Position numbers and translations under genes: made by a program. A stretch of 64,000 nucleotides of DNA, taken from positions 186,001 through 250,000 of the IMG/VR virus record IMGVR_UViG_3300032562_000003, one strand, 5' to 3'. Under the pieces are notes generated by a model. It was given only the letters and a program-made list of their open reading frames with translations, searched no databases and had not been told where the DNA came from. Shown one piece after another: positions 14,063 to 17,409 of this stretch (the first letter of the stretch is position 1; every line of letters begins with the position of its first letter).

Positions 14063-16603
14063 ATGGCAATTAGAGAAGTATTCTACTCCGGTTCCAAACC
14101 CAATGTCCATCCAAGAGAAAAATTTGCTGAATCACTAGAAGATGCTAGGAATCAGTGTACGACTGAGCATTTTTGGATTATCAACGAGTTTTGTGACTAC
14201 CGTAAATTTGATTGGGACTTTGATTTCGAGCTATTACCTGACGAAGATATTTGGGCAGAGGCACACGACAATGTATGGCCTAGCCAACATCAAAAAGATA
14301 GTGGTACATGGCTGTGTCCTAAGGTAGCCGGTGATTATACTATCTATCGAACCGATGTTCCCCCAATTCAACGCAAGAATGAAATCAATGATTTTTGGAT
14401 TATAGATCCGGCCCTGGATAAATCTAGGTTTGACTTTTCTTGGCACCCAGATCCTACGTCTCCTCCATACATATATCAATTCGGTACTCTGCTCGATGAA
14501 AACGACGGACCCAGATACGTCACTCCCTATAATGACGGAACCATAGTACATCTAGAACGCAAGGAGGTCATACTAGAAGACCTAGAGTTTTCGAAGTACT
14601 ACATCACTACTACATTGGAAGATTTAATCAACGACCACACTAATGAAATCTTTTGGGCATTGAATCCTGAAATTGATTATTCTGGGTTTGACTTTAAATG
14701 GGTCCCTGACAGTAAGAACGTATATCACATAAATGCATTTGGTACGAAAGACAATATAAACTCCCAGACTTACTTTGTTAATGGTAAGATGTGGGCACGT
14801 GGTTATCGGGACATTAACTACATTGAGGATAAGGTACTAGATGTACGAACCAAGATCGATATTTTCTTTGTCGATAAAGGAAATCCTCAGGCACAAGAAC
14901 GCTTTCAGCAATTATCTGAGCGTATGGGCAACGTAACTAAAACTAGATATCTGAACAGCTGGGTTGACACGATCAATCGTTGTGTGACTAAATCAACTAC
15001 CAATCTATGTTGGATTCTCAATAGTGAATTAGACTATTCGTCATTTGAGTTTGATTTCTATCCTAGCCCATGGCAGATGAACTTAGTTCATGTGTTTGGA
15101 ACTCAGTGGTCACACTGGGGAACAACCTTTATGGTTAACAAAAATACATTTGCTGATGATACCAAATATATAAAAGTCATTGAGCATTTGCCTAATATAA
15201 ATTTTGTAAAACGATCACCTGCTAAGGCAGTTGATTGTCTTTATGCTATAGTAATCATCGACCATGGTAACGGTGTTGATACAGTAAAAGATGATCTACT
15301 CAGTAAAAATCTGAGCGAAAGAAACATCATTGCTGTGAAATATGATACCAATTATCTAAAAACATTCAAGGAGGTACTCAGTAAATTAGATGTCAATCGT
15401 GAACATTATGTATGGATTTGTAGTAGCGTGTGTGATTATAGCAGATTTGATTTTAGCTATATCTGCGATCCGTACACCAAAGAACAACTCCACGTCTTCC
15501 CGAGCGGTAATCAAAAATTAGGAGACACGTTTCTAGTAAACGTCAACAAGCTGCGCAAATTGATAGCAGATATGCATCGTCTAGAAGACTATGAAAAGAT
15601 TAATTATAATCAACATCAAGTTGTCTCAAGATTGATGACACCCACAACTATCGAAGGTGCATATTTTCCAAATGAAACACATATGGATTATGCTAGAAAT
15701 TATGAATGGGATTTTCCTTATGTAACTCTAGTAACTGAAGAAAACTGGGATATGGATCCTGAAATTGATCCCGAACCTATGTGTCTTTGGTCACCCGAAC
15801 AGAAAGCAATCATTATTTCTAGTACAGGTGCAACTAGAGTTACGATTCCTCGCGAGGCTAAAAACTATGTCAAAAGTGAACTGTATGATTACCCGTATAT
15901 AAAGCGAGCAAAAAAACTAACCAAATCTAAACCGATGGACATAGTGTATCTCAGTAACGGTGAAGCCGGGGCCGAAAAAAACTGGGAGCATCTACTTCAA
16001 ATTACTAAAAACATACCAAATAGGGTAGTCAGAGTGGATGGAGTTAATGGTCGAGTTGCTGCATATCATGCTGCTGCCGAAGCCAGCGAGACACCATGGT
16101 TATTTACGGTATTCGCTAAGTTACACATCAATTCTAATTTTGATTGGTCATGGCAACCAGATCGAATGCAAGCACCTAAGCATTATATCTTTCATGCGAA
16201 GAATCCGGTCAATGGATTGATCTACGGTCACCAAGCGATGATCGCGTATAATAAGCAATTAGTGCTAGAGAATGACGGTTATGGACTAGACTTTACGTTG
16301 GATGACCTGCACGAAGTTGTTCCACTCATGTCCGGTACTGCAAACTATAACACTGATCCGTTCTCTACTTGGCGTACCGCATTCCGTGAAGTGGTCAAAT
16401 TGAAGGCCGAAGATACCGACATTGCCCGAGAGCGATTAGAAGCTTGGCTTACTAAAGCTGAAGGTGATTTTGCAGAATATAGCATCAAGGGTGCAAAAGA
16501 CGCAGAAGCCTATTACGATGAAGTTGATGGCGATTTTGATGCACTGCGATTGAGCTACGAGTGGGAATGGTTAAAATCACGCTTCGTGCAAAAATACGGT
16601 TGA
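14063..16603 (+). CDS. large multi-module glycosyltransferase-like protein
   Basis: about five repeated W..(D)Y..FDF.W.P modules; last module resembles 209..1150. Confidence 0.55.
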   Translation: MAIREVFYSGSKPNVHPREKFAESLEDARNQCTTEHFWIINEFCDYRKFDWDFDFELLPDEDIWAEAHDNVWPSQHQKDSGTWLCPKVAGDYTIYRTDVPPIQRKNEINDFWIIDPALDKSRFDFSWHPDPTSPPYIYQFGTLLDENDGPRYVTPYNDGTIVHLERKEVILEDLEFSKYYITTTLEDLINDHTNEIFWALNPEIDYSGFDFKWVPDSKNVYHINAFGTKDNINSQTYFVNGKMWARGYRDINYIEDKVLDVRTKIDIFFVDKGNPQAQERFQQLSERMGNVTKTRYLNSWVDTINRCVTKSTTNLCWILNSELDYSSFEFDFYPSPWQMNLVHVFGTQWSHWGTTFMVNKNTFADDTKYIKVIEHLPNINFVKRSPAKAVDCLYAIVIIDHGNGVDTVKDDLLSKNLSERNIIAVKYDTNYLKTFKEVLSKLDVNREHYVWICSSVCDYSRFDFSYICDPYTKEQLHVFPSGNQKLGDTFLVNVNKLRKLIADMHRLEDYEKINYNQHQVVSRLMTPTTIEGAYFPNETHMDYARNYEWDFPYVTLVTEENWDMDPEIDPEPMCLWSPEQKAIIISSTGATRVTIPREAKNYVKSELYDYPYIKRAKKLTKSKPMDIVYLSNGEAGAEKNWEHLLQITKNIPNRVVRVDGVNGRVAAYHAAAEASETPWLFTVFAKLHINSNFDWSWQPDRMQAPKHYIFHAKNPVNGLIYGHQAMIAYNKQLVLENDGYGLDFTLDDLHEVVPLMSGTANYNTDPFSTWRTAFREVVKLKAEDTDIARERLEAWLTKAEGDFAEYSIKGAKDAEAYYDEVDGDFDALRLSYEWEWLKSRFVQKYG

Positions 16604-16629
16604 CATGCAATGTCATATATGATTAAATA
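16600..16629 (+). promoter_or_regulatory. sigma70-type promoter overlapped by TAAATA late motif, driving tmRNA
   Basis: TTGACA(16600)-17 nt-TTAAAT(16623); TAAATA 16624-29. Confidence 0.6.
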
Positions 16630-16635
16630 GTATTT

Positions 16636-16965
16636 GTTCGTTGATACGGACTTAAAACCGGGGAAGACAGGGGTGCGATTCCCCTCGCCTCCACCAGTAA
16701 ACACACGATAACAGGACGCTGGCTCTGTGAAGCGGGATATCGGGGTAGCTGCCGAGAAGACGGGGAGAGCATCGTGTGTTTTCTTATGGGGGCGTATAGT
16801 ATCGATTCACGGCTAGTAGGAAAGTGGAGAACACGGTAAGAAACGACCGTCAATCAGTTCAAATTACTAAATGCAAACGAAAATGATGCATATGAAGGCC
16901 TTGCGTTAGCCGCATAAGTCTTTTGGGCTTTGCTAGTTGAGCCTCGAAACAGAATCAACTAGCAC
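16636..16965 (+). ncRNA. ssrA: circularly permuted (two-piece) tmRNA
   Basis: T-arm AGGGG-TGCGATT-CCCCT + CGCCTCC-ACCA (ends 16696) precedes GGGGGCG (16788), giving acceptor stem with G3.U70; tag ORF 16873-16917 ANENDAYEGLALAA*; terminal hairpin 16931-16964; outer ends approximate. Confidence 0.92.
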
Positions 16966-17037
16966 CTATAAAACCTTTAAATATGATATATCGTCCTATA
17001 GGTCATAAATAATTTTGACATGTTAGGAGAACAAATC

Positions 17038-17409
17038 ATGAAAAACAAGTCAATTATTGCAATCGCTGCATTGGTAGCACTAAGTTTGGCTGCACCTGCA
17101 TCCGCACACCACTCGTTCGCAATGTTCGACAACCAAAAGTCGGTGACATTGGAAGGAACAGTAAAAGAATTTCAATGGACTAATCCGCATTCTTGGATTC
17201 AACTAATTGTGACTGATTCCTCTGGTAAGCCAGTTGAATGGTCAATCGAAGGCGGTAGCCCAAATGGTCTATCACGTTCCGGTTGGAAGCGCACTTCATT
17301 GAAGTCCGGCGATAAGGCTGTCGTAGTTGTACATCCTCTTAAGGATGGCACGAACGGTGGCTCGCTCGTATCTGTTGCGGTTAATGGACAACCAATCGGC
17401 AGTCGTTAA
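17038..17409 (+). CDS. secreted DUF6152-like protein
   Basis: signal peptide then AHHSFAMFD...GTVKEFQWTNPHSWI; family name recalled, not searched; TAAATA upstream (~17006). Confidence 0.7.
   Translation: MKNKSIIAIAALVALSLAAPASAHHSFAMFDNQKSVTLEGTVKEFQWTNPHSWIQLIVTDSSGKPVEWSIEGGSPNGLSRSGWKRTSLKSGDKAVVVVHPLKDGTNGGSLVSVAVNGQPIGSR

What the first reader, a model, noticed from the sequence alone, without database searches (positions are those of the whole stretch)
16636..16965. Phage-encoded circularly permuted (two-piece) tmRNA
Seen: the 3' acceptor half (T-arm + CCA at 16696) lies upstream of the 5' half (GGGGGCG at 16788). The stem has the alanine G3.U70 pair, the T-loop is the non-canonical TGCGATT, and the tag reads ANENDAYEGLALAA. 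The halves can cross-pair (TTGATACGG with CCGTCAA). Established: permuted tmRNAs are typical of alphaproteobacteria and a few beta-proteobacterial and cyanobacterial lineages, and standard tools often miss them. Inference: the phage carries its own ribosome-rescue RNA, which points to an alphaproteobacterial host. No smpB is in this window.
Basis: partly seen in the sequence, partly recalled or inferred. Interest (0 to 1): 0.8.

Follow-up and report, generated by a model that had tools for sequence, protein, structure and literature searches.

The report
Mosaic two-piece tmRNA in lake jumbo phage
An uncultured freshwater jumbo phage carries a complete, circularly permuted ribosome-rescue RNA (tmRNA); phages are already known to carry these, but this copy is stitched together from modules found in unrelated phages, so it does not reveal the host.

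Summary
ARAGORN calls a permuted tmRNA (tag ANENDAYEGLALAA). Rfam gives tmRNA_permuted 113.8 bits (threshold 47) and alpha_tmRNA 78.2 bits (threshold 50). The window is phage DNA: large terminase, UvsX, DnaB and RNA ligase. It is an uncultured lake jumbo phage found on contigs of 259-314 kb.

Covariation across 27 related tmRNAs supports the acceptor stem (G3.U70 in 27/27), the T stem, two inter-piece helices and PK1 stem 1. No smpB lies in the window.

Phage two-piece tmRNAs are already documented (53 of 133 unique phage tmRNAs in PMC9004378), so this is a new member of a known kind.

Two things are new. First, the tmRNA sits in a conserved slot of a jumbo-phage clade whose other members mostly carry beta-type tmRNAs. 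Second, this copy is a mosaic:
- The acceptor piece, intervening sequence, 5' domain and PK1 are 92-100% identical to those of aquatic T4-like myophages.
- The tag has no close relative.
- The 3' pseudoknot matches a beta-type tmRNA of an Alcaligenes phage.

The inference of an alphaproteobacterial host is therefore weak. Expression and processing could not be tested, because no RNA run was listed.

The parts
16600..16628 (+). Sigma-70-like promoter candidate: -35 TTGACA (16600-16605), 17-nt spacer, TG (16620-16621) and -10 TTAAAT (16623-16628). The predicted start lies at about 16635.
   Evidence: Read from the sequence. The tool's strict scan did not list it, because the -10 hexamer lacks A at position 2. 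A TTGAC-N17-TAnnnT motif ending about 7 nt before the acceptor piece recurs in 7 of 18 related tmRNA loci of both classes. This part is inferred, not shown.
16635..16696 (+). Acceptor piece (3' half of the tRNA-like domain). It holds the helix I strand (16635-16639), helix III strands (16658-16660 and 16663-16665), the T stem-loop (16669-16685, loop TGCGATT), the acceptor 3' strand (16686-16692), discriminator A (16693) and an encoded CCA (16694-16696).
   Evidence: Rfam RF04321 alignment and ARAGORN. Covariation gives the T stem 100% paired, helix I 85% and helix IIIb 97%. The piece is 62/62 identical in L026 and L031.
16697..16787 (+). Intervening sequence (91 nt), predicted to be removed on processing. 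It folds into a long hairpin that brings CCA next to G1.
   Evidence: It lies between CCA and the 5' strand. MFE hairpin is -29.1 kcal/mol. It is 89/91 identical in L026 and unrelated in L031. Removal is inferred by analogy with known two-piece tmRNAs (PMC11915505).
16788..16872 (+). 5' part of the coding piece. It holds the acceptor 5' strand GGGGGCG (16788-16794, G3 = 16790), a D-loop-like stretch with TCGA (16795-16805), helix III and I partner strands (16806-16812 and 16829-16833), PK1 stem 1 (16834-16837/16846-16849) and the A-rich leader ending TAAAT before the resume codon.
   Evidence: Rfam alignment. Covariation gives the acceptor stem 100% paired with 4 extra pair types, G.U in 27/27 sequences, and PK1 stem 1 at 78%. 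The co-fold recovers the 7-bp intermolecular acceptor stem.
16873..16917 (+). Tag reading frame: resume codon GCA, 14 codons reading ANENDAYEGLALAA, then stop TAA.
   Evidence: ARAGORN and the sequence itself. No close relative exists among the collected tmRNAs (best 33/44). The drop from 231/237 identity on its 5' side to 31/45 within it, against L026, gives Fisher p = 2e-8.
16918..16965 (+). 3' tail with a pseudoknot-like element (PK2). Stem 1 is GGGC (16925-16928) with GCCT (16941-16944). Stem 2 is GCTAGTTGA (16932-16940) with TCAACTAGC (16955-16963). The loop carries the conserved AACAGAA motif. No T-run terminator follows.
   Evidence: The alpha_tmRNA model extends to 16963. The fold gives a 10-bp hairpin. 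Stem 1 pairs in 77-85% of cells. Stem 2 pairs in only 57-68%, with one slid control reaching 60%. It matches the beta-type tmRNA tail of the Alcaligenes phage at 32/35 with one compensatory pair change. No terminator was found.
14063..16603 (+). Context only: an 846-aa protein of unknown function whose stop codon overlaps the -35 hexamer. It serves as the synteny anchor for the tmRNA slot in this jumbo-phage clade.
   Evidence: No Pfam or PHROG family. It is 100% identical on six IMG/VR contigs, and homologues at 55-70% are followed by a permuted tmRNA.

Best explanation
This is a working, phage-encoded, circularly permuted ssrA gene.

Proposed mechanism:
1. Host RNA polymerase transcribes a precursor of about 330 nt, starting near 16635 from a sigma-70-like promoter (inferred).
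2. The 91-nt intervening hairpin holds CCA next to G1.
3. Host RNase P cuts 5' of G16788, and host tRNA 3'-end enzymes trim back to CCA at 16696. This leaves an acceptor piece of 62 nt and a coding piece of about 178 nt (inferred by analogy with known two-piece tmRNAs).
4. The two pieces stay together through the 7-bp acceptor stem and helices I and III (supported by covariation).
5. Host alanyl-tRNA synthetase charges the RNA through G3.U70. Host SmpB and EF-Tu deliver it to ribosomes stalled on broken mRNAs.
6. Translation resumes at GCA 16873, adds ANENDAYEGLALAA and stops at TAA. The ribosome is released and the tagged peptide goes to host ClpXP-type proteases through the C-terminal LAA.

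The likely benefit to the phage is keeping ribosomes available and recycling amino acids while host mRNAs are being degraded or cleaved by defence nucleases (inferred).

In evolutionary terms, the gene occupies a slot conserved in a freshwater jumbo-phage clade. It was rebuilt by recombination from modules circulating among unrelated phages.
For: Gene identity:
- ARAGORN permuted call with tag.
- RF04321 at 113.8 bits and RF01849 at 78.2 bits, both full length.

Structure, from 27 distinct related tmRNAs:
- Acceptor stem and T stem pair in 100% of cells with compensatory changes, and G3.U70 is invariant.
- Helix I pairs at 85%, helix IIIb at 97% and PK1 stem 1 at 78%, all well above slid controls.
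- The co-fold recovers the intermolecular acceptor stem and a stable hairpin in the intervening sequence.

Phage origin:
- Hallmark phage genes in the window, and jumbo-phage terminase relatives.
- The same 375 nt are identical on six IMG/VR contigs and present in at least 20 lake or freshwater metagenome runs.

Conserved slot: 55-70% relatives of the upstream 846-aa protein have a permuted tmRNA downstream, while the 40% outgroup has none.

Replacement and mosaic:
- The tmRNA tree splits 95/95 into a jumbo-clade class B and a class A that holds the window, alphaproteobacterial genomes, Caulobacter phages and T4-like phages.
- An AU test rejects a single jumbo clade (p = 0.006).
- The protein tree puts the window inside the class-B carriers with 100/100 support.
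- Best matches differ by module, with a sharp breakpoint at the tag (p = 2e-8).

Dependence on host SmpB: no smpB in the window or in 908 kb of phage loci around related tmRNAs.

Precedent: phage two-piece tmRNAs are documented (PMC9004378), as are tmRNAs in huge phages (PMC7162821).
Against: - No expression or processing data exist. No RNA-seq run holding the gene was listed.
- The promoter is a hand-read match that the tool's strict scan did not list, and no terminator was found.
- The six contigs are identical, so they say nothing about selection on this exact copy.
- PK1 stem 2 was not resolved.
- Support for PK2 stem 2 is weak: 57-68% paired, with one slid control at 60%.
- The alpha-specific helices of RF01849 are missing or mismatched in the window.
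- smpB could lie in the roughly 200 kb of the genome outside the window.
- The AU test was run after the tree had been seen, although the group was defined independently by synteny.
- The benefit to the phage is inference only.
Confidence: 0.78

Rival explanations
1. The gene is a recently captured passenger. It is a structurally intact tmRNA, but it is not expressed or not used by the phage, and it persists only because it arrived recently by recombination.
For: - The exact copy is known only from one near-clonal phage population, so selection on it cannot be measured.
- The mosaic structure shows recent recombination.
- No canonical promoter or terminator was called by the scan.
- No RNA data were available.
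Against: - A permuted tmRNA is kept in the same slot across a diverged phage clade whose neighbouring protein is only 55-70% identical.
- All functional determinants are intact: G3.U70, ACCA, the resume context and the LAA end.
- Helices covary across the family.
- A promoter-like motif recurs at the same distance in both classes.
Confidence: 0.1
2. The RNA manipulates host trans-translation rather than simply adding rescue capacity. It could compete with host tmRNA for SmpB, or replace the host tag with a phage-chosen tag, changing which proteins are degraded and by which adaptor or protease.
For: - The tag is the one module with no close relative. It diverges sharply between otherwise near-identical RNAs: ANENDAYEGLALAA, ANENFVSQEFALAA (L026) and ANDNSAFETRLAA (L031).
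- No smpB is carried, so the RNA must draw on host SmpB.
- A tRNA-like-domain-only phage tmRNA that inhibits host tmRNA is on record (PMC4131195, PMC11915505).
- Selective tagging of host proteins has been proposed for Melnitz (PMC9004378).
Against: - The tag keeps the usual AN(D/E)N start and ALAA end expected of an ordinary degradation tag.
- The full mRNA-like domain is present, unlike the decoy form.
- Tag divergence may simply reflect recombination or weak constraint on the middle residues.
Confidence: 0.1
3. The locus is an integration-site remnant: a phage attP or a piece of host ssrA picked up by imprecise prophage excision.
For: tmRNA genes are common integration sites, and ssrA fragments do occur in prophages (PMC4383910, PMC9004378).
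Against: - The gene is complete, with both pieces, the tag and both pseudoknot regions.
- No integrase lies among the ten neighbouring genes scanned.
- The genome is a T4-terminase-type jumbo phage.
Confidence: 0.02

Closest known systems
Two-piece (circularly permuted) tmRNA of Alphaproteobacteria, Rfam RF01849 (type case Caulobacter crescentus, as cited in PMC9004378 and PMC11915505)
   Same: The gene order is the same: acceptor piece, intervening sequence, coding piece. It also shares G3.U70, an encoded CCA, a long tag of 13-14 residues ending in LAA or VAA, and the AACAGAA motif in the 3' pseudoknot loop. It passes the family's gathering score as the best match in its clan. Four alphaproteobacterial genomes share its T-arm.
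   Different: It is phage-borne. Its T-loop is UGCGAUU rather than the model consensus GGCgGUA, and the alpha-specific extended helices are deleted or mismatched. Its 3' pseudoknot matches a beta-type tmRNA.
Two-piece tmRNAs of aquatic T4-like myophages (the published Melnitz and pelagimyophage group, PMC9004378; here contigs L026, L031, L040 and others)
   Same: L026 and L031 are the closest relatives for the acceptor piece (62/62), the 5' domain (45/46) and PK1 (35/38 and 35/37). L026 also matches the intervening sequence at 89/91. Both sit in lytic phages with no nearby smpB.
   Different: The genomic context differs. Those phages have tmRNA-hydrolase-gp33-gp59, while the window has p846-tmRNA-DUF6152-p677. 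The tag and 3' tail differ. No glutamine riboswitch is present here, unlike Melnitz. The Melnitz, HTVC008M and Mosig sequences themselves were not retrieved, and blastn found no cultured-phage match beyond the T-arm and the PK2 element.
Beta-type permuted tmRNAs (RF01850) in this phage's own genomic relatives and in Alcaligenes phage vB_Af_QDWS595
   Same: Relatives L047, L048, L051, L056, L058 and L083 have the tmRNA in the same slot, downstream of the p846 homologue. The window's PK2 tail is 32/35 identical to the Alcaligenes-phage tail, with one compensatory change.
   Different: Most have a GGGCCWG acceptor stem, 10-residue tags such as ANDSQFALAA, a clear terminator hairpin and sometimes an extra element after PK1. 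They fall on the other side of a 95/95 split in the tmRNA tree.
Permuted tmRNAs of Caulobacter phages (phiCbK-like, CcrColossus, CcrBL10)
   Same: The T-arm and acceptor 3' strand are the same, at 92-97% over 36 nt. Rfam calls them permuted (82-84 bits), and CcrColossus also passes alpha_tmRNA at 53.5 bits. They are large phages.
   Different: Beyond the T-arm they are only distantly related. They lie next to tRNA genes, are missed by ARAGORN and are unannotated in GenBank.
One-piece tmRNAs of mycobacteriophages and Bacillus phage G, and the tRNA-like-domain-only form of phage DS6A (PMC4131195)
   Same: They are phage-encoded ssrA genes without an accompanying smpB in the cited lists.
   Different: They have standard, non-permuted gene order. 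DS6A lacks a tag reading frame and acts as an inhibitor.

Membership tests
tmRNA, permuted (two-piece) form (Rfam RF04321) | Covariance-model score at or above the curated gathering score, over the full model | tested here: met
   113.8 bits against 47, model positions 1-213 of 213, E = 2e-21
tmRNA, permuted (two-piece) form (Rfam RF04321) | Gene order permuted: the T-arm and acceptor 3' strand with CCA lie upstream of the acceptor 5' strand and the tag reading frame | tested here: met
   CCA at 16694-16696, GGGGGCG at 16788-16794 and the tag at 16873-16917
tmRNA, permuted (two-piece) form (Rfam RF04321) | Alanine identity: a 7-bp acceptor stem with G3.U70, discriminator A and CCA | tested here: met
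   7/7 pairs. G.U is invariant in 27/27 relatives, and four other positions show compensatory changes
tmRNA, permuted (two-piece) form (Rfam RF04321) | Tag reading frame with an alanine resume codon, an in-frame stop and a hydrophobic C-terminus (LAA type) | tested here: met
   GCA at 16873, ANENDAYEGLALAA, TAA stop
tmRNA, permuted (two-piece) form (Rfam RF04321) | Pseudoknot PK1 just upstream of the resume codon | tested here: inconclusive
   Stem 1 (16834-16837/16846-16849) pairs in 78% of cells with covariation. Stem 2 was not resolved with these tools.
tmRNA, permuted (two-piece) form (Rfam RF04321) | The transcript is cleaved into two pieces that stay base-paired, is charged with alanine, and binds SmpB | not testable with these tools
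   No RNA run was listed. The inter-piece helices are supported by covariation only.
Alphaproteobacterial subtype (Rfam RF01849) | Score at or above the gathering score, and best among the clan's tmRNA and tRNA models | tested here: met
   78.2 bits against 50. Lower-scoring overlapping clan matches were dropped.
Alphaproteobacterial subtype (Rfam RF01849) | Subtype-specific helices and the T-loop of the model consensus | tested here: not met
   Two outer helices are marked non-canonical or deleted in the alignment. The T-loop is UGCGAUU against the consensus GGCgGUA. The model's 5' hairpin pairs in only 50% of cells.
Alphaproteobacterial subtype (Rfam RF01849) | All modules share one ancestry with alphaproteobacterial tmRNAs | tested here: not met
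   The PK2 tail's only close match is a beta-type tmRNA (32/35). The rest groups with class A, which includes the alphaproteobacterial genomes.
Betaproteobacterial subtype (Rfam RF01850) | Best-scoring clan model at or above its gathering score of 84 | tested here: not met
   Only alpha_tmRNA survived clan competition for the window. The window's own score under the beta model is not shown by the tool.
Riboswitch-linked phage ssrA (Melnitz type, PMC9004378) | [quoted passage not shown] | tested here: not met
   No other Rfam family at E <= 1 in 16450-17150
tRNA-like-domain-only phage tmRNA decoy (DS6A type, PMC4131195) | No tag reading frame or mRNA-like domain | tested here: not met
   A full coding piece with the tag and both pseudoknot regions is present

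The most novel reading that the evidence does not exclude
Phage tmRNA genes may form their own gene pool, evolving by swapping modules between unrelated phage lineages that meet in the same waters. The modules are the tRNA-like domain, the intervening sequence, the tag and the 3' pseudoknot. The lineages involved are jumbo, T4-like and N4-like phages.

On this reading the window's gene is an alpha/beta chimera sitting in a slot that ancestrally held a beta-type gene. The tag would be the module under the fastest turnover, because it sets how the phage redirects host proteolysis. An ssrA subtype would then say little about a phage's host.
Probability: 0.35. Interest if true: 0.5.

Novelty: new member of a known kind. 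Interest (0 to 1): 0.35.

Why it matters
Phage-encoded tmRNAs are part of how large phages take over translation, but nobody has shown what they do during infection. This locus does not open a new category, because standard tools find it and the class is described.

It adds two useful points:
- An uncultured, recurrent lake jumbo-phage clade keeps a tmRNA in one fixed slot. The RNA there changes subtype and is rebuilt from modules shared with T4-like and N4-like phages.

The near-identical RNA cores carrying different tags also offer a natural test set for what the tag does for a phage.

Tried and rejected
1. Host or donor search. Most were ordinary one-piece tmRNAs of many phyla, and only five clean permuted calls came up, four in Alphaproteobacteria and one in a bin labelled Verrucomicrobiales. 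None was close to the window. That T-arm is therefore not lineage-diagnostic, and no donor was found.

2. Downstream DUF6152 gene as a host clue. Homologues at 69-87% identity occur in unrelated phyla, so the gene is uninformative.

3. RNA evidence. No RNA run was listed. Read laying was not used, because only DNA contigs were on offer and they cannot show processing.

4. T4-type late promoter. TATAAATA is not enriched in the window (2 matches against 6 expected), and the locus has a one-mismatch version only.

5. Extra inter-piece helix in the MFE co-fold (GGAAGAC 16662-16668 with GUCUUUU 16918-16924). Rejected because L031 has an identical acceptor piece but lacks the partner sequence.

6. 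Apparent similarity of the upstream 200 nt to marine contig L005. It was spurious, since tblastn finds no p846 homologue there.

7. Link to cultured Melnitz or pelagimyophage tmRNAs. blastn of the window's and L005's tmRNAs against 50,697 phage records hits only the Caulobacter-phage T-arm and the Alcaligenes-phage PK2 element. L031's gp59 is only about 40% identical to any cultured phage.

8. The foundational two-piece tmRNA papers (PMC516066 and PMC16621) are not held. Subtype definitions therefore rest on the Rfam models and on PMC11915505.

9. My recollection that the phiCbK genome paper reported a tmRNA was wrong. That paper does not contain the word.

Full report
**The observation.**
- The T stem-loop is at 16669-16685, with loop TGCGATT.
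- The acceptor 3' strand CGCCTCC is at 16686-16692, followed by A and CCA ending at 16696.
- Ninety-one bases downstream, the complementary 5' strand GGGGGCG sits at 16788-16794, with G16790 opposite T16690 (G3.U70).
- A reading frame from GCA at 16873 encodes ANENDAYEGLALAA and ends at TAA 16915-16917.

ARAGORN calls a permuted tmRNA with that tag. Rfam gives tmRNA_permuted at 113.8 bits (gathering 47, E = 2e-21) and alpha_tmRNA at 78.2 bits (gathering 50), both over the full model. A permissive rescan of the locus finds no other RNA family, so there is no riboswitch.

**The window is phage DNA.** Almost all long ORFs are on the + strand at about 40% G+C. They include a large terminase, a UvsX-like recombinase, a DnaB-like helicase and a T4-type RNA ligase. 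The terminase is about 50% identical to those of jumbo phages: Sinorhizobium phage Phosso, Pseudomonas PA5oct and Agrobacterium Atu_ph07. No GenBank phage matches the locus at the DNA level beyond about 36 nt of the T-arm.

The upstream 846-aa protein is 100% identical on six IMG/VR contigs, the longest 258,859 bp. The 375-nt tmRNA region is identical on all of them. The downstream protein also occurs on a 314,240-bp contig. At least 20 lake or freshwater metagenome runs hold the locus. This is an uncultured, recurrent freshwater jumbo phage.

**Structure.** I collected 27 distinct permuted tmRNAs from viral contigs, annotated phages and bacterial genomes. I removed the intervening sequences, aligned the two pieces and counted pairs against slid-partner controls.

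| Element | Cells paired | Note |
|---|---|---|
| Acceptor stem | 100% | Compensatory changes; G3.U70 in 27/27 |
| T stem | 100% | Compensatory changes |
| Helix I (16635-16639 with 16829-16833) | 85% | Eight extra pair types |
| Helix IIIb (16663-16665 with 16806-16808) | 97% | |
| PK1 stem 1 (16834-16837 with 16846-16849) | 78% | |
| 5' hairpin of the alpha model | 50% | |

So the halves do cross-pair, but by the acceptor stem and helices I and III.

A thermodynamic co-fold recovers the intermolecular acceptor stem. It also shows that the 91-nt intervening sequence forms a -29 kcal/mol hairpin that brings CCA next to G1. After the stop codon, a pseudoknot-like element (16925-16963) carries the AACAGAA loop motif seen in all relatives of both classes. 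Its stem 2 has only weak covariation support, at 57-68% with one slid control at 60%.

**Expression signals.** The sequence has TTGACA at 16600-16605, a 17-nt spacer, TG, and TTAAAT at 16623-16628. That would start transcription at about 16635, which is the first position of the Rfam model. The tool's strict scan does not list it. A similar TTGAC-N17-TAnnnT motif ends about 7 nt before the acceptor piece in 7 of 18 related loci of both classes. There is no T-run terminator. No RNA run holding the gene was listed, so transcription and processing remain inferred.

**smpB.** A profile of 21 SmpB proteins taken from bacterial ssrA loci finds nothing in any frame of the window (best E = 0.47). One of those proteins was verified as PF01668 at 199.6 bits. 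The profile also finds nothing in 908 kb of phage DNA around related tmRNAs. The RNA must therefore rely on host SmpB, unless smpB lies in the unseen part of the genome.

**Relatives of the phage against relatives of the RNA.** Phages whose homologue of the 846-aa protein is 55-70% identical also carry a permuted tmRNA just downstream.
- In six of them Rfam calls it beta-type: RF01850 at 97-119 bits against a gathering score of 84, with tags such as ANDSQFALAA and ANDESYALAA.
- Three more pass only the general model or are marginal.
- The 40% outgroup has no tmRNA near the gene.

By contrast, the window's nearest RNA relatives are L026, L031 and L040. These contigs carry hydrolase, the gp33 late-transcription coactivator and the gp59 helicase loader downstream of the tmRNA. 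That marks them as aquatic T4-like myophages with the gene order reported for Melnitz (PMC9004378).

An IVS-free tmRNA tree splits 95/95 into class B and class A. Class B holds ten jumbo-clade phages. Class A holds the alphaproteobacterial genomes, Caulobacter phages, T4-like phages, the window and L006. An AU test rejects a single jumbo-phage tmRNA clade (p = 0.006). The test came after the tree was seen, although the group was defined by synteny. In the 846-aa protein tree the window lies inside a 100/100 clade of class-B carriers, and L006 pairs with a class-B phage (94/99). The simplest reading is that a beta-type gene in a conserved slot was replaced.

**Mosaic.** Best matches differ by module.

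| Module | Best match |
|---|---|
| Acceptor piece | 62/62 (L026, L031) |
| Intervening sequence | 89/91 (L026); unrelated in L031 |
| 5' domain | 45/46 (L026, L031) |
| PK1 | 35/38 (L026) and 35/37 (L031) |
| Tag ORF | Nothing above 75% |
| PK2 tail | 32/35, only with Alcaligenes phage vB_Af_QDWS595 |

The identity drop against L026 at the resume codon is abrupt: 231/237 before it and 31/45 within the tag (Fisher p = 2e-8).

The Alcaligenes phage is an N4-like phage of a betaproteobacterium. It carries an unannotated beta-type permuted tmRNA (RF01850 at 93.8 bits, tag ANDNVYAAAA). Its stem 2 differs from the window's by one compensatory pair. L017 is the converse chimera, with a class-B body and a class-A acceptor stem and T-arm.

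**Host.** The alpha-type call is sound at the level of the tRNA-like domain.
- It scores best with RF01849.
- Its T-arm is shared with Caulobacter phages.
- Its T-arm is shared with four alphaproteobacterial genomes.

It does not carry over to the host, for three reasons. The phage's genomic relatives carry beta-type genes. The gene itself is chimeric. And Melnitz is a published case of an alpha-type ssrA in a phage of a non-alphaproteobacterial host (PMC9004378). The host is unresolved.

**What is known, and the verdict.** Two-piece tmRNAs are established in three bacterial lineages, and Rfam has a merged permuted model (PMC11915505). Phage tmRNAs have long been listed (PMC4131195). Huge phages carry tmRNAs and sometimes SmpB (PMC7162821). 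A jumbo Sinorhizobium phage has one (PMC11242549). Fifty-three of 133 unique phage tmRNAs were two-piece, mostly aquatic (PMC9004378).

The finding is therefore a new member of a known kind, found by standard tools. Its added value is the conserved slot with subtype turnover, the module-level mosaic, and the warning about host prediction. Function in trans-translation is very likely. What it does for the phage is inferred.

Noticed in passing
L047:9916-9990, L058:11608-11684, L161:1544-1620: Suppressor-type tRNAs sit next to the permuted tmRNA in two relatives of this phage (anticodon CTA, amber) and in the Alcaligenes phage (TTA, ochre). Stop-codon read-through would send ribosomes to mRNA ends and raise the need for tmRNA, so the pairing may be functional. 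The window itself has no tRNA in 64 kb.
   Followed up: no
L053:9999-10361, L050:10834-11148, L049:12694-12999: In three relatives the tmRNA intervening sequence is 340-373 nt long, against 91 nt here. It contains an ORF of 101-120 aa with no Pfam family, meaning a protein gene is nested between the two halves of a permuted tmRNA gene.
   Followed up: partly
L162:3908-3950: A 40-nt copy of the window's PK2 element (16924-16963), 100% identical, stands alone on another viral contig. It lies after an ORF and upstream of a tRNA cluster, and no tmRNA is detectable there at E <= 1. It is either a tmRNA remnant or an independent hairpin module.
   Followed up: partly
L001:2974-3267 (JX100810.1), L002:2981-3299 (MH588544.1), L161:1194-1541 (OK149171.2): Permuted tmRNA genes are present but unannotated in the GenBank records of Caulobacter phages CcrColossus and CcrBL10 and of Alcaligenes phage vB_Af_QDWS595. 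The T-arm match suggests about 25 more phiCbK-like records share this. ARAGORN misses the Caulobacter-phage copies.
   Followed up: yes
L017:5020-5360 (and L038): A converse chimera: the coding-piece body and terminator resemble the class-B (beta-type) jumbo-phage tmRNAs, but the acceptor stem and T-arm are class A, identical to those of the marine and freshwater T4-like phage tmRNAs L005 and L010. The tag is ANDNYYYEDLRLAA.
   Followed up: partly
window:17038-17409: A secreted DUF6152 protein (signal peptide, HH motif) is inserted between the tmRNA and the conserved 677-aa gene in this phage only. It is 69-87% identical to cellular proteins of several phyla, so it is probably a recently acquired moron.
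   Followed up: partly
window:20470-22975: A MoxR-like AAA ATPase and a DUF2201 metallopeptidase/VWA protein form a pair in a stretch of higher G+C (0.46-0.47 against about 0.40). Long antisense ORFs overlap both genes.
   Followed up: no
window:13347-14030: An HNH homing-endonuclease-like gene lies 2.6 kb upstream of the tmRNA slot. Such genes can promote local recombination between co-infecting phages.
   Followed up: no
L049 and L053 tag ORFs: Two class-B relatives encode tags ending in VNA (ANDSQYLVAVNA, ANDSQFLQAVNA) instead of the usual LAA, which is unusual for a ClpX degron.
   Followed up: no
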